A DNA stretch of 64,000 bases from Haliotis cracherodii (taxonomy: Eukaryota), in assembly GCF_022045235.1 (NCBI RefSeq), contig NW_027266297.1, positions 15,376,001-15,440,000 of the forward strand, written 5' to 3'. Below the pieces are notes generated by a model, which did not search any database, had not been told where the DNA came from, and saw only the letters and a list, made by a program, of their open reading frames with translations. How positions within the stretch are numbered: the first letter of the stretch is position 1; every line of letters begins with the position of its first letter. A program made the position numbers and the translations under genes. Of this stretch, positions 1 to 25,873 are shown in pieces.

Positions 1-81
1 CGCCTCTGCCACTAGCATAGTCACCTTTCGCGGTAAACATGGGTTGCTGAAGACCTATTCTACCCCGGATCTTCACAGGTC
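1..81 (-). mobile_element. SINE family A head (cut by window edge)
   Basis: Reverse complement of GACCTGTGAAGATCCGGGGTAGAATAGGTCTTCAGCAACCC. Confidence 0.85.
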
Positions 82-991
82 AAAGAGACACATACAATGG
101 GTCCAAACCAATCAAACTCATCTACCCACGTCATACAAACCTTTCTTCGTCAGCGGTCGCTTCCTGACACATACACTGATCTGATGGTTCTCTATCGGGT
201 CAGACGATGTGATTGGTCGATACTCAAGGTTACCTCGATAGTTACTGGAATAACAAATATATGTTAGAATGTGAAAAAACATGAATCACTTTGTTTCACA
301 TTTGAACATTCATTTGTATATGTTGTATGGGAAAATTAATTACAATTTAATGAGTTTCTGTAAAATATTCAATTTTAGCGAGTTGGTGACTTGAAATGCA
401 TACAATATCTCCACAAAATGTTAGCTGTGTGGAGTTCCCTGTTAGTTGGTATATATGTGTGCTCTTCGTCTCATCACAACACTGAGTACCAATGAACAAA
501 AAGTTGGCACATTAAATCTGGGTTGGTGGGGTAATCAATACCACATCATATCCCACTTTAGGCCTAATTGGGCCTGGAGCAGGCAAACAGGTGGATGATA
601 GAGTGTGCATCGATGTATACCATCAGCTGTATCAAACCACCTTGTCACCAGTCTGGGTCCCTAGCACATTTGCCAGCAATCATTTGGGCCCAGTTCAAAC
701 AAACCAATCATAAGACCACCTTAACCATGTTAACTCCAATACTTGAACTGAAACAGACTTTATACTCTGCAGGCATAACGACCATCCAATATCCATATAA
801 GAACAGATATCAATGTCACTTTGAACTGAGGTGTCCGTGTCAATGTTGTTAACTATGTGTTAGGAATATCGAGGTATACAACTTGCATCCTGTCATAGCA
901 GGACAGTAATAATATGAACTACTACGGAGTCTTTTTAGGACCTTTTCTGGGGCTATTCTAACAACCCCTTTCTCCACTGCATGTGACCTAC

Positions 992-1139
992 TTGATCATT
1001 GCGTTAAAAGCCCAGTTGGGGTCAGAAGTGTCGTAGTTCTTCTCGTTCACCTCCTTGATTGCCTGCTGTGCTGCTCGTCTGTCTTCTCGACGCTTCTGAA
1101 TCATTTCCACCTCCTTCACACAATTCGACTTCCGCCGTC
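992..1139 (-). CDS. KIF2A: KIF2A-like neck exon: GRRKSNCVKEVEMIQKRREDRRAAQQAIKEVNEKNYDTSDPNWAFNAMI; gene continues off the window start
   Basis: Diagnostic kinesin-13 neck RRKSNCVKEVE...RE.RR..Q...NW.F..MI; gacag acceptor, gtaggt donor. Confidence 0.97.
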
Positions 1140-1401
1140 CTGTCACAAAACATCGTGGCTTGAAACAAGTTCAGTTAAAATCTTGCAATTTTGTTGACAT
1201 GCCTGTTGAATCCACGATTGTCCTCAGTGTGCAGCATTCCCAATTACACTAATGATGGCTGTCACAGACTGAACCACTATTTTGAACAAGAAAACTTGGT
1301 TCTATAGGCTACATGGTATACACATCAACTGTGTCCTTCCTACTTGACAAAGGTTAGATGCAAGATGTTGACAATGGGTGAGGGGTACTGAACACTAACT
1401 A

Positions 1402-1755
1402 CCGTATTCGACGGAATAAGTGCCCCGTTCTCAGAAGTGCTAATATATTGGCTAGTGAACAATCCCAATTATCATCCCTTCCAATTGATCAATGTACACA
1501 AGATTTATTTATTTGTGTATAATACGCACTCGTGTGTTCTATGCGCCCTTAATTATGGGCAATTAAATTCTGGAAAATATATCTGTCGTGCATAATACGC
1601 ACAGACTTTTCTTCTGTATCATTTCAGGCTGTCAGCATAACCCACGAAATTTACGATCTTTCAGCTCTCTTTTTTCTCACCAAAATTATATTCAAATAAG
1701 AGCCCCCTATTTCTAAATTTGAGAGCGCCCTGGGCGCTTATTACGTCGAATATGG
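1402..1755. mobile_element. Tc1/mariner-pogo-type MITE
   Basis: TA flanks; imperfect TIR CCGTATTCGACGGAATAAGTGCCC / GGGCGCTTATTACGTCGAATATGG. Confidence 0.8.
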
Positions 1756-2191
1756 TAAGTCACAAGATGATCATGGGCAATTGAGGGACTGACTCAGGTG
1801 ACATCAAAGGTGTCTGAAAACATGGAGGTGCAAACCCCTGCACAACCCATTTCTCCCCCTGGATACCCCAATGTGAAAGAGTAAGAATTATGAGGTCAGA
1901 CATCAAAATTTGGAATAAGAAACCAAGGACAGAGTTTGTATTATGTCCAGAAATTACAACCTAAGAAGTCTTCTGAACTTATCACATAAAACATACTTTA
2001 CTCCTTGGCATGTATCCAGGGATGAGAATGGATATTTTCCTTTTAAGCTGAAATTCTTTGCAATAGAGTGTGGTCCATAATTTGAGGGTGTTTATGGGGG
2101 GAAGCCATCAGATTTTAACAAATTTGTGGTCGCTTAAATTTGTGGATCCGCAGAAGATTTTCACCCCTGTGTATCACGAAATATTGGAACT

Positions 2192-2470
2192 TTTGTTTGT
2201 TTGTTTGTTTGTTTGTTTGTTTGTTTGTTTGTTTGATGCTTACTGCCGCACTCAGCAATATTCCAGCTATATGACAGTGGCCTGGAAATAATCAGCCTGG
2301 ACCAGACAATCCAGTGATTAACATCATAAGCATCAATCGATGCAATTGGGATTTGATGACATGCATCAACAAAGTAGCTGAGTCTGACCACCTTATCCTG
2401 TTATGTTAGTTGCCTCACACGACCACCATACACTGCTGGGGAGCAATTATAACCCAGCATCCCCAAGGGG
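2192..2470 (-). mobile_element. SINE family A, diverged, long (AAAC)n tail
   Basis: Shared core CTGGACCAGACAATCCAGTGAT...CAGCAATATTCCAGC. Confidence 0.8.
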
Positions 2471-3427
2471 AAACACTGCAAGTGACGAGATTGAGCAGCC
2501 ACCACTGGAACACCATGCTGCAAATCAGGTGGCATCCAGCTTTCCCTGATATCTACTGATATTCAATTTGGATCCCATTTGGTTAAAATATTTCAAAGGG
2601 GTCAGTTTAATCATTAGAGCCCAGAAGTGGTAATTAGAGTTGCTATGGATGCTGTTCATGTGAATATTTAACCATGGTTAATCATGCATCCACGAATTGA
2701 TTTTTAAAATCCCTGGGATGTTGACTGAAAAGATTACTTGACAGTCGTCAGCCAATGGTATTTCTAAAACCACTGCACATAGGCCAAGCATTCTCACTAA
2801 AGATCACGGACCATATCCTAGAGCACACTTAGCACTTTTACAGCTCTAGGAAATCTCCAGGCAAATGCCACTTCCAGTGAAATGGAACTATCAGATTTTC
2901 ACAATTACTTCAATGCAAGCCTACATGAAGGGTGGTTAAGTTTGCTTAAATGTTGCTTCAAAATGGATTTATACTATATCTTGGTATGTCAGCTTAATGC
3001 AGAAGGAAAGAAAACTGACACAGGTCGTTGACGTTAAACACTTTGGTGAACCAAACCTACGAGCACAGGTATGGTGCAGACAGACCAAGGATCATAATCA
3101 GAGCAATTCTCAGATCTGAACACAACCAGCGGATCCTGGTACAGCTAAGGGTGCAAATGCAGTGTCCTCCACCACAAGGCCACCATGCCCTAGAAAGCCT
3201 AAACCCAATGGAAACAAAATCACTCTGACAACATAAGATTATTTCAAATAACCCCTTTCAAATACATTAAGCCTTTGCACAAATACGTGCTGGGTTGAAA
3301 ATTAAAAGAAAGAGGTATCTACTCTACAGTGGGACTACATCAAATTTCAAAACACAGTAGGTTTATCTCCTAAATTTCAGCTAAGCATAAAAATGTGATG
3401 AGTGATGCAGAAGTTTACAGAGTCTAC

Positions 3428-3604
3428 CCATCATGACCACAGGTACAGAGTGTTCACTGTTTGATGACTGCGACACAGGACACTGACCCCCAAGTTTCTT
3501 TCCATCATCCTTGCCATCTGGCACTGGTATGGACTGATCCACCTTCCCATTCTGGGCAGCTGCAGGACGTGCTGCATAGCTGGGCCGAGACCGGGCAGAC
3601 GACA
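3428..3604 (-). CDS. KIF2A: KIF2A-like exon 6: VSSARSRPSYAARPAAAQNGKVDQ...VPVVMM
   Basis: ARSRPS...AQNG resembles the KIF2A pre-neck linker; ttccag acceptor, G/gtagac donor; phase 1-1. Confidence 0.72.
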
Positions 3605-3780
3605 CTGGAACACCATCAACAGACATAGGTCAACTCGTGCTTATAGAGAGAAACATGCTTGTACAATATTAGAACGCATTTTAGAGCTTTTTTCCAGCTC
3701 TCACCCAAATAATATATATGGCCAAATGTTTAGTTTATTTCACAGACTAGATTATATTTTTTTATAAAAGTTTTATTGGA

Positions 3781-3942
3781 GTGAGTGAGTAAGGTTTTAC
3801 ACCACTTTTATCAATATTCCAGCAATATCACGGCAGGGGACACAAGAAACTGGCTTCACACATTGTATCCATGTCGATAATCGAACCCGGGTCTTCTGCA
3901 CGACATGCAAACGCTTTAACCACTTGGCTTACTGACCGCCCC
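3781..3942 (-). mobile_element. SINE family B
   Basis: TSD AAGT(T/C)TTATTGGA. Confidence 0.88.
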
Positions 3943-4212
3943 TAAGTCTTATTGGACAAAAATGCTTTCTTTTGAAAAACATCCAAACTTGCTGATTCAG
4001 CATTAAAATCGACTTCCTCACTGCAATCAAACCTCAATACATTAATTTCCATTGTCTCTTATATAATATCACACATGAGTGGACACAAATTTGCAATATT
4101 GATATGTTTTATGCCTGAATACACACAGAATCTAAACAAAGAAGTTTGGAATTTCCTATCATAGCTCACATTCATAATAAACTATCCAAGGTCTATCTTG
4201 ATGACATCTCAC

Positions 4213-4270
4213 CTTTATTAGATGATCTGGCATTGTCACGGTCGCCAGTTCCACCCAAGGATTTGTTACT
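4213..4270 (-). CDS. KIF2A: KIF2A-like probable exon 5: SNKSLGGTGDRDNARSSNK
   Basis: ttttccag acceptor and G/gtgaga donor; 58 nt supplies the phase 0 to 1 switch needed to join the next exon. Confidence 0.72.
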
Positions 4271-4548
4271 CTGGAAAACCATAATACATGCATATGATAG
4301 GGATGAGCATCAGAGGTTTACAGTGTATTGATCACAATATTTGGCTATGCACAAGACCATACTGGGATACGTATCACGATATATTGTAGAATTCTAAACA
4401 TTTAATTCAGGACAGCACTGCAATAATTGCATCATCAATTTTCTACACCTCGGCTATGCCTTTCACATTTGAAACAATTGACTACACCGACATCTTAGGG
4501 CCTCGGATGTTTATGATGGAAGTGAATGCACATCCACAGAAGGGAGGT

Positions 4549-4784
4549 GAGGTGAGGCACAATGGGGTCTAAGGTCGCCTTTAAGATTAACATGAATATC
4601 CCCCAGACACAGAATACTGACTCTGAGCCAACCAGTCCTTGTTACAGCCCTTTAATCCTGAGCACCAGGCAAGGTAAGAACAAGTACCATCTTTTAACGT
4701 CTTTTGGTATGAAGCGCCCAGGGATCGAACCCCGGACGTTCCGCTCTCCAGGCAAACGCTCTACCACGAGAGTATGGAGGCAGT
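4549..4784 (-). mobile_element. SINE family C, internally deleted
   Basis: TSD CACA(G/T)AAGGGAGGT. Confidence 0.8.
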
Positions 4785-5455
4785 CACATAAGGGAGGTAA
4801 CTTAGAATTAACCTCTATCTTTGCAAACTTGCACTGTGAAATTACGGAAACATTTCAAAGGTATTTGTCAAGTGTATTACATTAATTACATGATAAAAAT
4901 CCCTTGAGATAAATACCCTTGAACCATTCACAGCACAGGCATCCTTCTCATTAATAACACTATCTCCATCTTTTATCTCTAACTTTCAGAATTTCTCCTG
5001 CTCATGAGCTCAATGACCTTGAAGAAAACAATTCCTCTGAACGAGAAATAATAATACTGTTATAAATGAATATTCATATTGGGAGGACAGTTCCTATGTT
5101 GCCTGGTGTTCCAAATTTGTTTCTTTGAGAACTTTGTTGTTTAATAACGATATTCCTGCAACATGATGGCAGTCTGTACATAATCCAGTCTGACAATACA
5201 GCGCTTGACATCACCAGCATCGATCTTAACAACTGGGATACGATGACATGCTGTCTGGTGTTGTTAAGAATAAGATCATACTTATGTATCATGAAGCAAG
5301 TGTCATTATTGATAGATTGTCTATTTGCAGCCTCATGTCAATCGAAGGAAACTCAAAACAGTTTATGGTGGCAAATGGGTCAAGTGTATTTATCAAAACA
5401 GACTGGCGATACAGAACAAGGAATAATTGTGCATCCTGCTAAGTAAACTGCTGGA

Positions 5456-5545
5456 GTGAGTGAGTGAGTGAGGTTTTACGCCGCTTTTAGCAATATTCCA
5501 GCAATATCACGGCGGGGGGACACCAGAAATGGGCTGCACACATTG
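5456..5545 (-). mobile_element. 5'-truncated SINE family B
   Basis: 13-bp TSD GTAAACTGCTGGA around the 3' half, as expected for target-primed reverse transcription. Confidence 0.85.
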
Positions 5546-8365
5546 GTAAACTGCTGGAAGTGAACACAACAGGCAAACAATTCAGCCTCAAAACAAGGAG
5601 ACATATTTCAGTTTTCCATTTTACTGATATCCCTTCCTTTTAACACAAACACATTAAAATGTTGTGGCTCAAACATGGTAACCGATTCCCAATAATTTAC
5701 AGGCCTTTCAATTAAATTCAACAAAAACATAACTTTTCATTCGTAATACATTAAAATGTCAACTATGCAAAACGACAATAATACCTAAAGCCATAATTAT
5801 CAGAACCACAACATATTTCTAAAGCATTATCACAACGATTCAAAAACAACATTATACATTTAAAATATACACCTCTCAATGACATAATGAAATGGCTTTA
5901 AAAACTGGAGAAGATGTGATTATCATAAGCTGGTCAGGACTGTAATTAAAACCTAATAATGCAATGATGTAAAATTCATAATATACTAAGTCAAACCTCG
6001 TGTCGACTTCCTGGCTGTCTGGAAGTCATTTGGGAGTCCCAAATATCCAAAATGTTCCTGATGTCTCAAAACCCAGATAACACAAACTTTTTTTCAGGTA
6101 CCCACAACACAAAGTTCGACTGTATTTAAAAGAAGTTAAGGAACACCCAACTCTTTCAAACAATAATAGTTAATCTGTCATGACATACCATATCAACTAA
6201 AGTTTTTTTAGTCATATGGCAGAATCGAATATTCTGTAACTTCTTTTGAGTAGTATAAAAGCTGAAAGTGAAATTCTACATCTAACAGATTCTATAATAT
6301 ACACACAACGGAACTACGCATGCTGCAAAAAATGACTTAAACACAAACTACATATGACTTTACCACATTGCCCATACCGGGCCCTGGACGTCATCATTCC
6401 GTGCAATCTATTCCCACTACACATATGTATATCCATCACACACCCGTTCCTAAAGCTGCACCTAAAGTCACTCATGATAGTATTGTGGTGTGAGGTGACA
6501 CAACAAAAAGGTGGTGAAACAATCAATACGCTCATGCAAGCACAACCTTTGTTATTGTTTAACTGAAACAACTTGTCCAAACACATTAATTATTCACTCT
6601 ATTATGACTTGGGACGGGTGTTGCCCTTATCATAAACATCGCCTGCGGCCTTGTCGTTATATATGAGACATCTCAAAAACAAAGTTGCACATAGATTTTG
6701 TTGCTTGGGTTTTTTCTTTTCTAACAATGTACATAGAAACATGTGTTTATGGCTTGTGTGATCATGATGATGCCATAGTTTCAACAGGGTCAATAAAAAT
6801 AAACAGCAATCACTACAAACATGATGAAAAGATCACTTCATCCATGAGGATGTTTTAAAAAATAACTTAAAGATTAACCATCTTCTCATTATTAAATTCA
6901 ATAAAAATTAAAATAAATTAAAGAAACATTAAAAATAAAATATCTTCAACTTGTTAAAGTTCTAAACTTTACTATCAAGCAAAGTACGTGTTTCTCACAA
7001 TATACCTATTAGGCCAGACCAATTATTTTAAGATAAATTTTCCCCAAAAGAATTTCGTATTAAATTACATGAAACGTAAAATGCTGTGCATTTTTTGCAA
7101 ATTTTACAATGCAAGAGATCTGAGATCTGTTTTCATGTTTATCGAAATTCAGCTCATATTGCCTGACAAGATTTTCAACAAGGTTCATTATCGTTTTTAT
7201 TCTCTCGCTTGCCTCTTGGCATAGTGACCACAAAAATCTATAAAACAAGAGATTATACTGGTCTGGCCTAACAAAACATACACTCTTATCAATCAATCAG
7301 TCTATGCCTTGAGAGAAGCTATAAGGTCAGGTAAAGAGAAATTCAAAACCATCGATCAATATCAACGCGACATGATACATATTCTCTTATATAGCGGCAT
7401 TCATATGGCCTTCATAGAAGACATCAGGTAACACTTCTTCTGCCAAAAAAAATCAATCTTATTGATGCTATGGTTTACCATGAATCAATCCCATCAATGC
7501 AAGCATGATGGAGATGGCTGGAACATGTGATGAAGACAGTCCATGCAAGACCACATCCACAAAAGAACTGAACTAAACAAAAGGGGATGAACTGGAGATG
7601 GGGAGTGTCTCGGCAAGCAGGGTGACGGGCGATGGGTGATGGGCCGTTGCCATGAATAAACTCCCCCGACACCAACAGCAAGGCTTCATTCCTCATTCAC
7701 TTTCTACTGAACTAGATTCTTGGATGTAGATAATGGAACATTGAATTTTGGAAAATAGTTTCGGATGGCAAAGGGACCTCTTTATTTCTTTGTTCCACTT
7801 GGTAATAGGGCTGTGACGATTCGTAGTGATATACTACTCAAAAGAAGTCATAGAACACCCGATTCAAAATACTATAGATAATTTGGCTTTCAGAATTTGG
7901 TTTTCTTTATTTTCTTTTGAGAAGTATACATATTTTTTAATGATGGTTGAAATACGTGCAAACTACGCTACGACTTCCCTTCCTGCCAAATAACATGCTG
8001 TTCTTATCATGATAATAAAGCCTGCATAATTTTGGATTGATACATGACCATACATGACAATCGTTTCAGCCCTATGTTGTCGTGGAGGTGAGGTCACCAT
8101 TCTTCATTGTCGCTATGACACCAGTGTTTTGGGCAACTTTTAAACTATTCATGATTTCAAAACACTAATCACTGATTTGTCTTTACAAATATACTCTTTA
8201 GATCTTTACTCTTATTAAAAGTGCTTCCATTGTCTGTCAGTATCTCACTTATCCCCTATCTACACCCATGGAGGCATGCACTACCCAGACGTGAGCCAGT
8301 GTAAGACGAACGGAACCAGCCAACCAAGGAGAGACGGCAGGCGTGATGCAGCAGGGCAACGCTAC

Positions 8366-8542
8366 CTTGGCTCCGAGGCGCGAGATCTTACTGGGCTGGG
8401 CTAGGCGGGAGCTAGCAGATGGGGGCAAACCCTGCTGGGCCTGGGGGTCCTGCTCAGCAGGATTGTTATCACTAGTACTAGGTTCATCTTCATCCTCGTC
8501 CTCATCATCAGGATCCAGGTCAGGTTCTTCTTCAGGCTCTTC
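8366..8542 (-). CDS. KIF2A: KIF2A-like probable exon 4 (acidic, low-complexity linker): EEPEEEPDLDPDDEDEDEDEPSTS...SKISRLGAK
   Basis: GC-rich open frame between a cccag acceptor (weak pyrimidine tract) and an AAG/gtagcg donor; 177 nt, phase 0-0, fits the flanking exons; no sequence homology recognised. Confidence 0.65.
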
Positions 8543-8569
8543 CTGGGAGTTACAATTTACATTTAACCT

Positions 8570-8932
8570 TTCTACTTGAAATATGTTCATAAAACCCTTC
8601 TAGTTGAACAGATAACATTAAACTTACTCTTTGAACAATGTTCATGAAATCTTACTCTTTGAACATGTTGAACAATGTTCATGAAACGTTTCTCCTTGAA
8701 CAATGTTCATTAAACTCTTCTACTTGAACAATGTTCAGTAAAACTTTTTCCTTGAAAAACGTTCATGAAACCTTTCTCCTTGAACAATGGTCATTAAAAC
8801 TTTCTCCTTGAACAATGGTCATTAACACTGTCTCCTTGAACAATGGTTATTAAAACTTTTTCCTTGAACAATCGTCATTAAAACTTTCTCCTTGAACAAT
8901 GTTCATTAATCCTTTCTCCTTGAACAATCGTC
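8570..8932. repeat. 28-bp minisatellite (TTGAACAATGTTCATTAAACCTTTCTCC-like), about 13 units
   Basis: TTGAA recurs at 8696, 8724, 8752 and onward. Confidence 0.9.
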
Positions 8933-9647
8933 AACATCTGAAAATCTTAAGTACTGAAAGACCACTCCATTATCAGCTGCGTGGGAAACATGAAAGGTTT
9001 GGCTAAAAGGAGACGTTACCCCCACACCTTGAATGTAACCTAAACCAAATACCAGAGCTCAGAAATCCTGTATCTAATGCAACTCCCTCACAGTGAAGAC
9101 AAATCACACTGTAGCCTGTGAAATGTGATTAAACTTAACAAGACATACATGCAAACTATCAAACTATCACAGTTCAGTGGATCCTCAGTACATTCATACT
9201 TGTCAGCCATTGTGACCATTCAATACCAATAAAGCTGATTTTAACAAGCAATGGCCATTGGCCTCAGTCCACAAAGTGATCTCAGCGTCACGATGACAGT
9301 AAGCCTACTAAAGTATGGGACTTGCGTGCACCTTAGCAGTAAGATTGCTTTGTTAAACAGATACCTGGGGACTACGCTATCCCAAACATTAAGCTACTCC
9401 TCTTCCATACTGAAGACACACAATTAGGGAATGATGCATTTCATGATACAATCCTCTGATCATGTCAGTTCACACAGCCTCAGAGTCAGTTAAATACATT
9501 CAGTATTGATTACGTCCCTCATAATTCACTTTGGACTTGTCCTATGTATCATACATACTCTTGGTGAGTAAAACATGATCGTCCGGAATCAAACATAACA
9601 AAGAACATTGTACCATGACCAGACATAACTACATCCCTTAGTTTCTA

Positions 9648-22087: not shown

Positions 22088-23802
22088 TCATGTGAATAGT
22101 CCATGGAATATACCTGTGCATAGTCTCCACTGTTGGTCGAACATTTACACACGCTCGCAGTGAAGATTAGTGGCTCAGTTAAATAATTAACGAATCAAAC
22201 GAGCACAGTGTAAGGAACCATTCTTGGCGTCACAAGTCTTCATTATGCTGGAATACTACAGAAACGGATAACCCACACGAGATGCGTGTTTTACCGTAAA
22301 AGCGTTAGAAGCGGACGTACAATTACCATTGATGTCGTCATTGAAATGCCCGGTCTAGATTTGTAGCCTTGTATTGCTTCAAGGCGCCACTGAAGGAAAG
22401 AACCTTGTCTGTCATACAGACCCTAAAACAAATATTTGCAATACAGCCCTTGCAAGTCTAAAATGTTTGGCAAGTCTAGATTACTGCAGTATCAGGACAA
22501 ATGAAGAAAGTGGGGAGGAGATCTGGACTTGGTTGAAGCATGCGATCCAAATTGCGTGTATAGATGCTCATGATATCAATCACTGGATCGTCTGTCCGAA
22601 CCCGATTATTTACAGACCGCCGTCATATGGCTGAAATATTGGAGTGCGGCGTAAAACAACAAACCAAGCCTTTAACTATATCATTTGCAAAAAATGCCTA
22701 CTCATTTTTTTTATTACCGTGGAATATTTAACTTACAAATGTGGACCTGCACCTTTAACAAATTACATGAATTCACTTCATATATAAAACAATGGGACAA
22801 AACACAACCTTTGCCTCGGAATTTCATTATTTCATGACCTGTACTTCACAACTGCCATTGAGGTTGTGAGTCATGATCGCCACTAGACTCATCATGGCTA
22901 TATAGTATGACAAATGGAATATGTTGCAATAACCATAATTGGTTAATATCGAGAAATGAGCGCGATTATACAGCGCCATTTCTTCGTGTCTGTCTTAAAA
23001 CTGAGAGCTTGGTTTTCAGCTTTAGTTTAAAGTTTGTAAGCGATTATACAAATGATAACGCGACAGCATTCACATGGCGCATTAGCCGTGTTTGTTTCTC
23101 TGGGTATTGGTTGTGATTCGCTGTGCGGGTGACATAGAGGTTATCACGCGAGTGTGTTTGGGGATGGTAAATATCCTGCATTAGGAATAAACATTGTATT
23201 TAGCGAGCCTTGGCGAGCTAAATACATAGTGTTTATTCCTAATACAGGATATTTACCATCCCCAAACACACAAGTGTGATAACCTCTTTATCATATAATG
23301 TCATTCTTTAATTCTGTGCTTCAAAATCGCTTTCCCTCTCTCACAAGCATTACCGAAACATTGCGAGTTTTCCTGGAATGCGCGCATTAATGTTTATTAC
23401 GTCACAGGGTAAGTGATGTGTCAGTCGGACAGTGACAGTAGCCAATATAGTTCCAACTGAAGTCTGTTTCTTATACTGTGGCGAAGCAACATATACGCAA
23501 AACAACAACTGTTTTTAATTGCTTTTCGCGGCAATCCATCGGTCTGTCCGCTAGAGTAACTGCCCTTTGTCAAAGGGAAGCTACTCTAACCCTAGTCTAT
23601 GAGACGTCACGGCCACGGTCAGACGTTGTTGACAGTCGGTCTGTCCTGTCATAACGATAAGAAGTGTAGTCAGATGTACACACAGCGACAAAACGAAACA
23701 AGGTAACAATTCAAACATATTTCTGCCAAATACAACTATTTTAATTTGTGGAGGAGGTTTCAAGGCGCAGAGGCCTACAAGCACAGGTATGGCTACTGAT
23801 CC

Positions 23803-25126
23803 CACAGGGCCACGTATAGCCATACTATACTGACTGTGCAGACATTTACGACTTTATTGTGTATGAAGTGTCACATGACAATGAGGTAACCTCCAAATGG
23901 TTTCAGAGTTTTGTCACTGATGAGGTAGTCAGAGATTCCCAATCTGAAGAACGGAAAACAAGCAGACAGGAACTTTTGGAGGAAGTAATCCGAAAATACA
24001 CATGTATGTCTTCCGCCCAGTTCCGGAAGGAATTTAAAAGAAAAATGAAAGCCAAGAAAGAGGAAGCACACCGAAAGCAAATAAGAATGAGAACTGAGAA
24101 GACCAGTGATTCCAAAGCATCCAACGAAATTGGAAAACTAAAATTCAGTGAGGACAAGAGTTCTGGACACATTGCGACACACAGACGTTTGCAAAGTGAA
24201 CTACAGTTAAATTCATCATACTTTGAATCTTGTAATTTTCGAAAACTCAAGTTAGAAATGCTATGTAAGGCCTATGGTCTTTCTGTTTCAAAAAAATCAA
24301 CAAAGAAAGACTTGGCAGCTAAACTTGCCGCAGAAATTTCTACCGTGGATAGCATACCCAATACAGAATATCTAGACCTTAAAGACACAGACTCAACTAA
24401 AATTACACCAACAGCACCATGTTCAACAGCATCATGTTCAAAAGCATCATGTTCATTTCAAGCACCTGATGAAGATCTCCCGCGTGCAAAAAGGCAGAAA
24501 ACCACCAAATCAATTGGAAAGGGAAAAGGAAAAGGAAAATCTAGGCAGGAGATAACTGTATTGAATCCATGCACAAAATGCAAAGAAGAGTGTTCTTTTG
24601 ATTATATCATTTGTGACTTGTGTGGCAATGTATACCATTTCAAATGTCTATCCCTTCAAGACAATGAAGAAGAGTTACAGTCAGATGAATGGTATTGTAC
24701 TGACTGTCAGAGTACAATTTACTGACAAAAGTTTACATGTGACTCGCAGTGTTGTATTATAATTAGACCAATGGTTATTATGTTTACTTGTTCATAAATC
24801 TATTTTTATCATGTGTCATGTGAGAAATATTATCTGATCAATATGCACATTAGTGGTGACAATGCTCTGTTTCTTTGTTGATGAATCTATTTTGGTCTTG
24901 TATGATGTCGGACAATGACAGACTGTCAGTTGTTGATCTCAGTATTCCAGTATGTTTCATGGACATTATTACCAGAAAAATTACATTATGATATTTGTTC
25001 TTGTGAAGATAGTAAAAATTATAATTACTATCACATGTTGAACTATGCTTGTACAGGTTTGAATCTTGCATGTGAATTATCTTCAGATATTTTTGTCAGT
25101 ACAGTATGGCTATACGTGGCCCTGTG
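23803..25126 (+). mobile_element. Non-autonomous TIR DNA transposon, 1324 bp (P-element-like termini CACAGG; hAT not excluded)
   Basis: 32-bp TIRs at 23803-23834 and 25095-25126 (31/32 identical); perfect 8-bp TSD ACTGATCC at 23795-23802 and 25127-25134. Confidence 0.92.
23859..24725 (+). CDS. Transposon-borne ORF, 5'-truncated: helical/basic region, SAP/HeH-like motif, GK repeat, C-terminal PHD finger
   Basis: 288 stop-free codons, and the frame stays open back into the left TIR; C4HC3 PHD CTKC..CDLC-GNVY-HFKC..WYCTDC at 24570-24707; KLKLEMLCKAYGL..KKSTKKDLAAKL SAP-like at about 24237-24327; first in-frame ATG at 24006. Confidence 0.75.
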   Translation: MYEVSHDNEVTSKWFQSFVTDEVVRDSQSEERKTSRQELLEEVIRKYTCMSSAQFRKEFKRKMKAKKEEAHRKQIRMRTEKTSDSKASNEIGKLKFSEDKSSGHIATHRRLQSELQLNSSYFESCNFRKLKLEMLCKAYGLSVSKKSTKKDLAAKLAAEISTVDSIPNTEYLDLKDTDSTKITPTAPCSTASCSKASCSFQAPDEDLPRAKRQKTTKSIGKGKGKGKSRQEITVLNPCTKCKEECSFDYIICDLCGNVYHFKCLSLQDNEEELQSDEWYCTDCQSTIY

Positions 25127-25873
25127 ACTGATCCCGCTTGGCTAGGCCTCGTGCCCTCGCCAAATTGTTTCGAAATTTATATCTCCAAAGTTGCCAAAAC
25201 TTATAAAATGCCTTAGCTACGTCACAGTTAGACACAGATTTTCAGTATATTAGACTGTTCTTTTGATAATGATAGCAATTATCCCTGTAGTTTATCCAGA
25301 TTCCCGATGGTTAATTCTGACTCGATTTACATGGGCGACGCCATGTTTTTTATAAACAGTGAAAGTAGTCCCTACTTGACCTTTGATATTTGCATCTCTA
25401 TCCGCATATAACCCCAACGGATATCGTTTTTATTCGTTGGCCTTATCCTGCCGAGAAACCTACCCATTATATGATAAATGTCAGGATCCGCAGGTCATTG
25501 GTTCGAATCCCAGTTCCGCCTTGATTATGATGCTGGGTTTGCAGCACAACATCCATCGTGGGTGTTTTCACGCACAGAGGTAAAGGTACGCGACCTGCGT
25601 CATTATACGCGCTTTCCTTTTTCAATGCATTTAATGCTTTTATTCAAAATTTTCACAAAACGGCAAGCACATAACGCGCTCGGTTGTCAATGGGGGCAAA
25701 CCCTGCAATTTATAAATTTCTATCGGAGCCTTTCTATCTTGTCTTGCACAACACAACATCCACGTACAGTGAGAAGTGTCGTAAAGTCATTTAGCTACCG
25801 CCCCGACCCAAGCCAACATAACTCCCTGACATGTCACCCGCACAGCGAATACAGGAGTTATCTCCCCTTTAAC

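What the first reader, a model, noticed from the sequence alone, without database searches (positions are those of the whole stretch)
23795..25134. Young TIR transposon that kept only a SAP-like plus PHD-finger chromatin-binding module
Seen: near-perfect 32-bp TIRs, a perfect 8-bp TSD and about 300 uninterrupted codons that run right up to the left TIR. This means the 5' part of a larger gene was deleted at the TIR edge. The remaining protein has a helical 'ELLEEVIRKY..MS..QFRKEFKRK' segment (reminiscent of P-type transposase C-termini; inference), a SAP/HeH-like motif, a GKGKGKGK basic patch and a canonical C4HC3 PHD finger. Established: P elements have CA termini, about 31-bp TIRs and 8-bp TSDs; PHD fingers usually read histone H3 tails. 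Inference: the parent is a P-like transposase with a chromatin reader that could steer insertion. This deletion derivative might express a catalytically dead reader from ATG 24006 that acts as a dominant-negative regulator, the mirror image of Drosophila KP repressors, which keep the N-terminus.
Basis: partly seen in the sequence, partly recalled or inferred. Interest (0 to 1): 0.78.

Follow-up and report, generated by a model that had tools for sequence, protein, structure and literature searches.

The report
Broken-off piece of a helicase-carrying P transposon
This is a young, single-copy, non-autonomous fragment of a 9.4-kb P-type jumping gene, and the reading frame it kept is the tail of a helicase gene that this transposon family carries beside its transposase, not part of the transposase.

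Summary
There are 32-nt TIRs (31/32 complementary), an exact 8-bp target duplication, 296 open codons starting at the TIR edge, and a PHD finger (Pfam E 2.9e-7).

The parent, found at G000:C8:23969845-23979272 (9,428 bp, same TIRs, 8-bp TSD), is a P-superfamily element. A profile of its transposase hits only the Drosophila P element transposase in the PDB, and D230, D303 and E531 align.

The retained ORF is not transposase. It is the last 296 aa of a second gene on the opposite strand: a Pif1-like helicase with a long tail (helical domain, basic helix, helix-loop-helix, Gly-Lys patch, PHD). The same gene pair occurs in diverged elements of this genome and, intact, on an unrelated 8-kb contig.

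The window copy is not a simple deletion. It has two junctions at the TIR edges, and its insert is inverted relative to the family's asymmetric ends.

It is single-copy. One RNA-labelled run of the species shows no depth inside it. The only sister derivative carries frame-breaking indels. The dominant-negative idea is therefore unsupported.

The tail's helical domain gave P transposase's C-terminal domain as top fold match (Z 8.4), an untested lead. I found no paper describing a P-type element with a Pif1 helicase.

The parts
23795..23802 (.). left copy of the 8-bp target-site duplication
   Evidence: identical to 25127-25134; empty-site joints in paralogous repeat copies in 4 of 4 runs
23803..23834 (+). 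left TIR (32 nt). It is of the family's 'A' end type, and identity to that end type runs on to nt 35
23835..24725 (+). open frame of 296 codons plus TGA. It equals residues 343-638 of the 638-aa tail ORF of the parent's Pif1-like helicase gene (99.8% nt identity, 2 differences, both non-synonymous)
23835..24056 (+). remnant (last roughly 74 residues) of the tail's helical domain, which in the parent (residues 228-416) best matches the C-terminal domain of Drosophila P transposase. The remnant runs into the conserved basic helix
   Evidence: the truncated form no longer finds 6p5a
24006..24008 (+). first in-frame ATG (would give 239 aa); no evidence that it is used
24243..24344 (+). helix-loop-helix ('SAP-like' by shape only), conserved across the family
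   Evidence: AF2 helices 137-146 and 157-170; family alignment; no Pfam SAP hit
24390..24530 (+). predicted disordered linker. It holds three 15-bp tandem units (24409-24453), and the Gly-Lys patch (24516-24539) follows at its end
   Evidence: unit number varies between copies
24570..24707 (+). C4HC3 PHD finger. The family's nearly invariant Trp before the His is Val in this lineage
   Evidence: Pfam; folds; PDB profile; column count 26 W of 29
24726..25094 (+). non-coding 3' stretch colinear with the parent, downstream of the tail ORF
25095..25126 (-). right TIR (32 nt), of the family's 'G' end type, which in the parent lies upstream of the helicase gene
25127..25134 (.). right copy of the 8-bp target-site duplication
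23300..23794 (.). context: left part of the very high-copy host repeat into which the element inserted (the right part is 25135-25486)
   Evidence: summed contig depth of about 1e5 in DNA runs against about 25-40 inside the element

Best explanation
The element at 23803-25126 is a young, single-copy, non-autonomous derivative of a 9.4-kb P-superfamily DNA transposon.

The parent carries two genes:
- a P-type DDE transposase;
- on the other strand, a Pif1-like helicase with a long C-terminal tail (helical domain, basic helix, helix-loop-helix, Gly-Lys patch, PHD finger). In this subfamily the transposase sits antisense in the helicase gene's intron.

The window copy keeps only the two 32-nt ends and 1.26 kb of the parent: the last 296 codons of the helicase tail plus its 3' flank. 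The insert lies inverted relative to the family's two distinguishable ends. The most likely origin (inferred) is interrupted gap repair with a template switch into the parent's interior after an excision. The product either then transposed or formed at this site, and it lies inside a high-copy repeat.

Its ORF is open because the copy is young, not because it is maintained. It has no promoter of its own that I could show. It most likely does nothing except remain mobilisable in trans by a matching transposase.

For the parent's helicase-tail protein I infer, but did not show, an accessory role in transposition: tethering the transposition complex to chromatin through the PHD and the basic/helix-loop-helix parts, with Pif1-type activity at the ends or in long-tract gap repair of the donor site.
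For: - Parent found by DNA search. C8:23969845-23979272 is 9,428 bp with the same TIRs and an exact 8-bp TSD, and holds the window's nt 34-1292 at 99.84% identity.
- Gene content. PIF1 PF05970 E 2.6e-27 and Pif1_2B for the flanking ORFs; PF21787 for the antisense ORF.
- P-type transposase. 24 of 25 homologues carry PF21787, and two are named 'Transposable element P trans...' by their source. A 16-sequence profile hits one PDB sequence only, 6p5a P element transposase, E 1.1e-6, with D230, D303 and E531 on conserved D, D and E.
- Tail belongs to the helicase. Homologues run straight from the helicase C-terminus into the tail. Of 9 long members, 7 have PIF1, 8 have Pif1_2B and 5 have PHD. The family has 538 clusters at E<=1e-3.
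- Linkage is conserved. The C18 element (335-bp TIRs, exact 8-bp TSD) has the same genes at 27-34% identity, and so do C67 and C5. Contig L056 has the same nested arrangement, fully intact.
- Family behaviour. There are 301 TIR ends. Of 13 short TIR pairs, 10 have exact 8-bp TSDs. Three longer copies are simple internal deletions.
- Inversion and junctions.
- No sign of use. It is single-copy. The C6 copy has frame-breaking indels. RNA-labelled run X22 of the species has zero depth inside the element.
Against: - The only full-length copy of this subfamily in the assembly is itself defective. It has a TAA where homologues read through in the helicase-tail gene, and a frameshift before the catalytic-E motif of the transposase. 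The source of the recent activity is therefore not identified; these defects could be recent or could be assembly errors.
- Absence of RNA rests on one small run stored as contigs and is weak.
- The inversion claim rests on two markers: one SNP, and the 3 bases after nt 32.
- The gap-repair origin and every proposed function of the helicase-tail protein are inference.
- THAP and GTP-binding domains were not detected by Pfam in the transposase.
Confidence: 0.82

Rival explanations
1. The ORF is the C-terminal part of a P-like transposase that carries its own chromatin reader. The derivative expresses a catalytically dead reader from ATG 24006, which acts as a dominant-negative regulator.
For: - The parent is P-like.
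- The ORF is intact with an in-frame ATG.
- The helical region upstream of the window's breakpoint best matches the P transposase C-terminal domain (Z 8.4, rmsd 3.6, 117 of 118 residues). A fragment could therefore in principle compete for a docking site.
- A DNA contig in another study's run of the same species (X6) spans the left TIR/ORF junction with 0 differences, so the copy is real.
Against: - The ORF belongs to the helicase gene on the opposite strand from the transposase.
- There is one copy only.
- Both differences from the parent are non-synonymous.
- The C6 sister copy decays.
- RNA-labelled run X22 has zero depth inside the element.
- The docking-domain candidate is truncated to its last roughly 74 residues and no longer finds 6p5a.
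- The PHD lacks the family's conserved Trp.
Confidence: 0.05
2. Pack-type capture. A MITE-like element picked up a fragment of an ordinary host gene encoding a PHD protein.
For: - The structure is TIR + foreign insert + TIR, with both junctions at the TIR edges and the insert inverted.
- The family is dominated by roughly 100-bp MITEs.
Against: - The source sequence lies inside a TIR-bounded, TSD-flanked 9.4-kb element of the same family.
- The same gene is linked to a P-type transposase in four places of this genome and on an unrelated contig.
- Homologues are multi-copy in other species.
Confidence: 0.02
3. The helicase-tail gene is not a functional part of the P-type element. It is a passenger, for example a Helitron-derived or host Pif1 gene into whose intron a transposase unit landed, with the linkage incidental.
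For: - Pif1-like helicases are the hallmark of Helitrons (recalled; Helitron papers seen only as listings).
- Contig L057 holds the helicase-tail ORF without a transposase within 6.2 kb.
- More distant P-like transposases in this genome show no helicase within their 3.5-4.3-kb loci.
Against: - The pair is kept at 27-45% protein identity in two different arrangements: nested antisense in C8 and L056, convergent in C18, C67 and C5. Both genes always lie inside the TIRs where the ends are seen.
- Both ORFs are intact in L056.
- No Rep endonuclease domain was reported by Pfam in any ORF scanned.
Confidence: 0.1

Closest known systems
Drosophila P element and its internally deleted derivatives (KP and others)
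   Same: - 8-bp TSD and roughly 31-32-nt TIRs.
- A transposase whose RNase H core and D/D/E triad align to 6p5a.
- The family produces many internally deleted non-autonomous copies, as expected from interrupted gap repair after excision. Passages of bioRxiv 10.1101/554550 say that synthesis often terminates prematurely.
   Different: - KP keeps the N-terminal DNA-binding part of the transposase and represses. This copy keeps the C-terminal tail of a different protein.
- The insert is inverted, with two junctions.
- The parent has a second gene (Pif1-like helicase with a PHD tail).
- No THAP domain was detected.
- The transposase ends about 65-70 residues after the catalytic E, without the Drosophila-type C-terminal domain.
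Kolobok lineages with accessory genes (KolobokH with RecQ helicase, KolobokE/D/P with nucleases)
   Same: A DDE cut-and-paste transposon that carries a DNA-repair-type accessory enzyme, sometimes on the complementary strand (passages of PMC9587614).
   Different: - A different superfamily. Kolobok's TTAA target is recalled; here the TSD is 8 bp of no fixed sequence.
- The helicase is Pif1-family (SF1), not RecQ.
- It is fused to a chromatin-reader tail.
Helitron / Helentron Rep-Hel proteins
   Same: A transposon-borne Pif1-like helicase.
   Different: - No Rep (HUH) domain.
- TIRs and TSDs are present.
- The helicase is paired with a DDE transposase and is not fused to a nuclease.
RAG1/RAG2 (Transib-derived recombinase with a PHD-bearing partner)
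   Same: By analogy only: a DDE enzyme working with a separate subunit whose C-terminal PHD finger reads histone H3. This is recalled; PMC4411706 was seen only as a listing and the start of its abstract.
   Different: No sequence relationship was tested. RAG2 is a kelch-repeat protein without a helicase. The PHD function here is untested.

Membership tests
P superfamily of DNA transposons (parent element) | DDE transposase homologous to P element/THAP9 transposase (RNase H core) | tested here: met
   PF21787 E 3.4e-7 (C8) and 8.3e-14 (C18). 24 of 25 homologues carry PF21787. The profile's only PDB hit is 6p5a, E 1.1e-6, with D230/D303/E531 aligned to conserved D/D/E. A single-sequence phmmer against PDB found nothing.
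P superfamily of DNA transposons (parent element) | 8-bp target-site duplication | tested here: met
   Exact in the window copy, C8, L033, L034 and C18; 7 of 8 bases in C6. Of 13 MITEs, 10 are exact, 2 match 7 of 8, and 1 has none.
P superfamily of DNA transposons (parent element) | short TIRs of about 31 bp | tested here: met
   32 nt in the window copy. In fuller copies the inverted similarity extends to about 100 nt, and the C18 sister family has 335-bp TIRs.
P superfamily of DNA transposons (parent element) | [quoted passage not shown] | tested here: inconclusive
   No THAP hit in the 743-aa or 772-aa ORFs at E<=0.01 or 0.001. The precomputed Pfam of 25 homologues lists none. A separate upstream exon is not excluded.
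P superfamily of DNA transposons (parent element) | GTP-binding insertion domain in the RNase H fold | tested here: inconclusive
   Pfam reported no GTP-binding-domain family. The second aligned stretch to 6p5a spans chain 283-536, which includes that region, at a weak score.
P superfamily of DNA transposons (parent element) | all-helical C-terminal domain after the catalytic E on the transposase | tested here: not met
   The transposases end about 65-70 residues after the E motif. PF12596 was not found in the genome, but the control rang nowhere, so that search is uninformative. A domain of similar fold sits in the helicase tail (Z 8.4).
KP-type repressor derivative | retains the transposase's N-terminal DNA-binding and dimerisation part | tested here: not met
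   No part of the transposase gene is present; the ORF comes from the helicase-tail gene.
Simple internal-deletion derivative | one deletion, with the remaining sequence colinear with the parent and in the same orientation relative to the ends | tested here: not met
   There are two junctions (nt 33/34 and 1292/1293). End types are swapped relative to the insert. C6, L033 and L034 do meet this test.
Pack-type element (captured host gene fragment) | insert derives from a non-transposon host gene | tested here: not met
   The insert derives from the family's own autonomous-type element, and that gene is linked to P-type transposases elsewhere.
PHD finger (PF00628) | C4HC3 zinc ligands and PHD fold | tested here: met
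   Pfam E 2.9e-7. Ligand columns are at least 90% conserved. The best Foldseek and VIA matches are PHD fingers. PDB profile hits run from 1e-13 to 1e-6.
PHD finger, methyl-lysine reading subtype | aromatic cage including the Trp two residues before the His (feature recalled) | tested here: not met
   Val in the window and C8 copies; Trp in 26 of 29 rows. Binding specificity was not testable here.
SAP domain (PF02037) | match to the SAP profile / helix-extended loop-helix fold | tested here: inconclusive
   No Pfam SAP hit for the window ORF at E up to 10. The helix-loop-helix is predicted with high confidence. No SAP protein is in the top 60 or top 50 lists, and that part of the model was barely tested.
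Pif1-family helicase (parent gene) | PIF1 ATPase core plus 2B domain | tested here: met
   PF05970 E 2.6e-27 and PF21530 E 6.9e-8 in C8. The family profile hits the C-termini of PDB PIF1 entries. None of this is retained in the window copy.

The most novel reading that the evidence does not exclude
This P-type lineage, found in bivalves, a hemichordate and probably other marine invertebrates, would be a two-protein transposition system.

The transposase has no C-terminal DNA-contacting domain. A domain of that fold sits instead on a Pif1 helicase that also carries a basic helix, a helix-loop-helix and a PHD finger.

The helicase-tail protein would dock into the transposition complex in trans. 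It would steer the complex to chromatin marks and use Pif1 activity at the unusual single-stranded ends, or to drive full-length gap repair of the 9-kb donor, making cut-and-paste effectively replicative.

The window copy, which keeps the last helices of the docking domain plus the chromatin-binding parts but no ATPase, would then be a natural candidate poison subunit.
Probability: 0.2. Interest if true: 0.8.

Novelty: new variant of a known kind. Interest (0 to 1): 0.55.

Why it matters
The window element alone is an ordinary dead-end derivative. It matters because it led to its parent: a conserved P-superfamily lineage that carries a Pif1-like helicase fused to a chromatin-reader tail. I could not find this combination described (searches; Repbase and Dfam could not be searched, and supplements were closed).

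P elements multiply through gap repair of the donor site. Drosophila PIF1 has been tied to long-tract synthesis in exactly that assay (passages of bioRxiv 10.1101/554550). A transposon that brings its own Pif1 therefore makes a concrete question testable: do cut-and-paste elements encode factors that bias repair in their own favour, or that choose targets by histone marks? An intact natural example (contig L056) is available for experiments.

Tried and rejected
- A single-sequence search of the C8 transposase against PDB gave only noise. A 16-sequence profile was needed.
- Foldseek on the 638-aa tail model gave no meaningful match apart from PHD fingers, and did not list 6p5a. The resemblance to the P transposase C-terminal domain therefore rests on VIA-align alone. 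Its Z of 8.4 is within the range that helical models reach by chance according to the tool's own note. I weight it mainly because an unrelated top hit would be unlikely to be the very enzyme of this transposon superfamily.
- Pfam at E up to 10 over 30 family members showed no P transposase C-terminal family and no SAP among the 25 commonest families.
- PF12596 gave nothing in the genome, but the control rang nowhere, so this is uninformative.
- The protein atlas returned no usable hit.
- dN/dS was not meaningful. There are only 2 differences to the parent, the C6 copy is frame-broken, and C18 is saturated at 27% identity.
- I considered hAT (also 8-bp TSD) and KDZ/Zisupton. I rejected them because the transposase profile's only PDB hit is P transposase and Pfam gives PF21787.
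- I considered that the inner TIR-like word in the parent marks a nested insertion. It is present in all four longer copies, so it belongs to the family consensus. Its role is unexplained.
One metagenome scan gave two contigs instead.
- Paper supplements were closed and may hold transposon libraries that bear on the novelty claim.
Full report
OBSERVATION

The repeat finder gives inverted arms 23803-23834 and 25095-25126, 32 nt, 97% complementary. The 23-nt terminal word occurs only at these two sites in the window, against 0.00 expected in 100 shuffles. In the whole 1.18-Gb assembly it occurs 301 times with up to 2 mismatches (150 forward, 151 reverse), against 0 for the reversed control.

The eight bases 23795-23802 are repeated exactly at 25127-25134. 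window:23835-24722 is open for 296 codons from the first base after the TIR to TGA 24723-24725. The first in-frame ATG is at 24006. Pfam finds a PHD finger at aa 246-291, E 2.9e-7.

The flanks (about 23300-23794 and 25135-25486) are a very high-copy repeat. Summed contig depth there is about 1e5 in two DNA runs, against 25-40 inside the element. Contigs from other copies of that repeat join 23794 to 25127, skipping 1332 bases (the 1324-bp element plus one 8-bp copy), in 4 of 4 runs laid. This is an independent empty-site confirmation of the insertion and its TSD.

THE PARENT

A DNA search of the genome with the element found its nt 34-1292 at 99.84% identity on contig C8, without adjacent TIRs. 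The same TIRs lie further out and bound a 9,428-bp element, C8:23969845-23979272, with an exact 8-bp TSD.

Read in the orientation of the window's ORF (positions in the 9,467-nt script extract, in which the element runs 20-9447), it contains:
- an ORF with the Pif1 ATPase core (PF05970, E 2.6e-27) at 249-1094;
- on the opposite strand, a 743-aa ORF (1638-3866) matching PF21787, the RNase H N-terminal domain of P-type transposases (E 3.4e-7), followed in another frame by 82 codons that carry the catalytic-E motif;
- then, again on the first strand, the Pif1 2B/C-terminal part (3968-4477);
- after one in-frame TAA, a 638-aa ORF (4481-6394), whose last 296 residues are the window's ORF.

Only two bases differ between the window copy and C8 over 1259 nt, and both are non-synonymous.

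IT IS A P-TYPE ELEMENT

The transposase has 25 database relatives at E<=1e-3 among 4858 candidates. Of these, 24 carry PF21787. Two are named 'Transposable element P trans...' by their source (Holothuria leucospilota, Sinanodonta woodiana), and a third named hit, left uncharacterized by its source, is from Priapulus caudatus.

The single sequence finds nothing in the PDB. A 16-sequence profile finds exactly one PDB sequence at E<=1: the Drosophila P element transposase 6p5a, E 1.1e-6. The match is in two colinear stretches in which chain residues D230, D303 and E531 fall on the family's conserved D, D and E.

The 8-bp TSD is exact in the window copy, C8, L033, L034 and the C18 element, and matches 7 of 8 bases in C6. 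Among 13 short TIR pairs (84-118 bp) found in the 35 loci then held, 10 have exact 8-bp TSDs, 2 match 7 of 8, and 1 has none.

No THAP or GTP-binding family was reported by Pfam. Those two features remain open.

THE ORF BELONGS TO A HELICASE GENE, NOT TO THE TRANSPOSASE

Relatives of the 638-aa ORF were found by two searches. The word-indexed search gave 4. The exhaustive HMMER search gave 538 clusters at E<=1e-3, 243 at 1e-10 and 46 at 1e-30.

These relatives run without interruption from the Pif1 C-terminus into the tail. The TAA in C8 is therefore a nonsense codon in one long gene. Nine long members were scanned:
- 7 have PIF1;
- 8 have Pif1_2B;
- 5 have a C-terminal PHD at E<=0.001.

Full-length proteins are about 1050-1160 aa. 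Named sources are scallops (Pecten maximus, Argopecten irradians), an oyster (Saccostrea cucullata) and a hemichordate (Glandiceps talaboti).

PHD is detected in 28 of 30 aligned members.

THE TWO GENES TRAVEL TOGETHER

A diverged element on C18 has 335-bp TIRs at 99.7% and an exact 8-bp TSD, and its TIR starts with the same six bases. It carries a 772-aa transposase (34% identity; PF21787 E 8.3e-14), a 627-aa tail ORF with Gly-Lys patch and PHD (27% identity), and two Pif1 exons. Here the transposase lies downstream of the tail in convergent orientation.

Two further places (C67, C5) show the convergent pair. Eight other places with more distant P-like transposases show no helicase or tail, but their loci span only 3.5-4.3 kb.

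Outside this genome, one metagenome scan returned two contigs.
- L056 (8,004 bp) has exactly the C8 arrangement at 30-45% protein identity, with every ORF intact: helicase exon 1 (82-705), a 773-aa transposase antisense (2075-4396), and a single 791-aa ORF with helicase C-terminus, tail and PHD (4769-7144).
- L057 (6,225 bp) has the 786-aa helicase-C/tail/PHD ORF but no transposase on the contig.

A tail protein and a transposase relative also sit on ENA contigs of identical length, 397,642 bp.

HOW THE WINDOW COPY AROSE

Three longer family members (C6 3.8 kb, L033 and L034 2.6 kb) are plain internal deletions of the 9.4-kb unit. The window copy is different. It is TIR + one odd base + parent 5508-6766 + TIR, with a 2-base overlap at the left junction. 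The right junction lies exactly at TIR nt 32.

The C8 subfamily's two ends can be told apart by one substitution and a 10-bp deletion next to one end, and three MITEs carry the same pair of end types. In the parent, the 'G' end lies upstream of the helicase gene and the 'A' end downstream of the tail. In the window copy the 'A' end precedes the ORF and the 'G' end follows it. The insert is therefore inverted relative to the ends.

I infer aborted repair synthesis after an excision, with a template switch into the interior of a full-length copy. That repair after P excision 'often terminates prematurely' is stated in passages of bioRxiv 10.1101/554550. The template-switch step is my inference.

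IS IT USED?

- It is the only copy with these junctions.
- A DNA contig from another study's run of the same species label (X6) spans the left TIR/ORF junction (23808-24221) with no difference. The copy is therefore not an assembly artefact.
- The RNA-labelled run of the same species (X22; the label is a guess by the tool) has depth on the flanking repeat but zero in all bins from 23867 to 25081.
- A run of another organism code (X15, RNA by guess) has low-depth contigs about 3% diverged. These continue past 25094 into sequence unlike the window, so they do not carry the window copy's right junction. They say nothing about the derivative.
- The other derivative that keeps the ORF's 3' part (C6, 94%) has a 2-bp deletion, other indels and a stop.
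- The open frame here is what 0.16% divergence predicts.

The RNA evidence is thin.

STRUCTURE LEADS

AlphaFold2 on the 296-aa ORF with 30 aligned sequences gives mean pLDDT 78.5:
- long helices at the N-terminus;
- a confident helix-loop-helix (137-146, 157-170);
- a disordered stretch (186-232);
- a PHD fold whose best matches are H3-tail-binding PHD fingers (Foldseek prob about 1, TM to target 0.6-0.76, E about 0.1; VIA Z 5.5-6.9).

The family profile hits PHD fingers in the PDB at 1e-13 to 1e-6, and the PIF1 C-terminus. SAP is not supported beyond shape. The Trp that precedes the zinc-binding His is present in 26 of 29 rows. It is Val in the window and C8 copies; the third Val is a misaligned row. 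Its role in methyl-lysine cages is recalled, not tested.

The 638-aa tail model (pLDDT 70.4) was searched against 48,161 PDB representatives. The top match was chain B of 6p5a, residues 617-734, the all-helical C-terminal domain of Drosophila P transposase: Z 8.4, rmsd 3.6 A, 117 of 118 residues, model range 228-416. The next row was at Z 6.9.

Passages of PMC7776569 describe that domain as tethered by a disordered linker. [quoted passage not shown]

The transposases of this lineage end about 65-70 residues after the catalytic E and have no such domain. So do the more distant P-like transposases in this genome, which weakens a simple 'moved domain' argument. Foldseek did not reproduce the match, Pfam gives no sequence signal, and the tool warns that Z about 8 is common for helical models. 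I treat it as a lead. It is strengthened mainly by the coincidence that the top hit among 48,161 chains is the enzyme of this very superfamily. The window ORF starts inside this domain (residue 343 of 228-416).

STATE OF THE FAMILY

The sole full-length copy of this subfamily in the assembly has a nonsense codon in the helicase-tail gene and a frameshift in a short AT run just before the transposase's catalytic-E motif. Yet the MITEs and the window copy are nearly identical to it. Either the active source is absent from this assembly or polymorphic, or the defects are very recent or sequencing errors. The C18-type element looks intact in its long ORFs, but its ends share only the first six bases with this family.

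COMPARISON AND NOVELTY

The window element is a member of a known kind: a non-autonomous derivative of a P-superfamily transposon. It is of neither the KP type nor the Pack type (see the membership tests).

The parent lineage is a variant I could not find described. Six full-text searches combining P element/THAP9/P superfamily with Pif1/helicase/PHD/bivalve returned no paper on such an element. A survey of bivalve transposons contains none of the words helicase, P element, THAP or Pif1 in its main text (PMC10294476).

The nearest precedent is Kolobok lineages with RecQ helicase or nuclease accessory genes (PMC9587614 passages). Repbase, Dfam and paper supplements could not be searched, so prior description there is possible.

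VERDICT

- The element itself is ordinary. The two-gene P lineage behind it is the interesting part.

Noticed in passing
window 23100-23794 and 25135-25486: The element sits inside a very high-copy repeat: summed contig depth is about 1e5 in DNA runs, and many contigs show the uninterrupted form. The left flank holds an internal inverted repeat (about 23130-23287 against 23136-23293, 87.5%). The repeat was not classified.
   Followed up: partly
G000:C8, about 23972327-23972354 (L035:328-355), and the same place in L036, L033, L034: A 28-nt right-TIR-like word (89-93% identity to the TIR) lies about 170 bp after the tail gene's 3' flank, followed by 1.2-2.5 kb of ORF-free sequence before the real right TIR. 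It is conserved in all four longer copies. Its role is unknown (an old end, or a subterminal binding site).
   Followed up: partly
G000:C18:7004049-7011904 (L054+L055): A sister P-type element of 7.86 kb has 335-bp TIRs at 99.7%, an exact 8-bp TSD and long intact ORFs for transposase, tail/PHD and Pif1 exons. It is possibly an active autonomous element.
   Followed up: partly
window 24409-24453: A 15-bp unit is repeated three times in frame in the disordered linker. Unit number differs between copies: one unit fewer in a contig of run X6, and fewer in the C6 copy.
   Followed up: no
runs X10-X14 (organism B) and X15 (organism C), laid on window 23836-25094: Other organism codes hold the parent-type sequence at about 97-98% identity. 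The family is therefore shared between species labels, by close relatives or by horizontal transfer. This was not resolved because names are coded.
   Followed up: no
G000:C67:15674886-15677528 (L045:472-3114), L048, L050-L052: Several other P-like transposase families are present (745-881-aa open frames, 23-28% identity to the C8 transposase). At least four loci are near-identical in score, which suggests recent activity. No helicase or tail was seen within the short loci.
   Followed up: partly
proteins P0006 and P0164: A tail/PHD protein and a P-type transposase relative are both recorded on ENA contigs of exactly 397,642 bp, probably the same contig in another organism. This could not be checked.
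   Followed up: no
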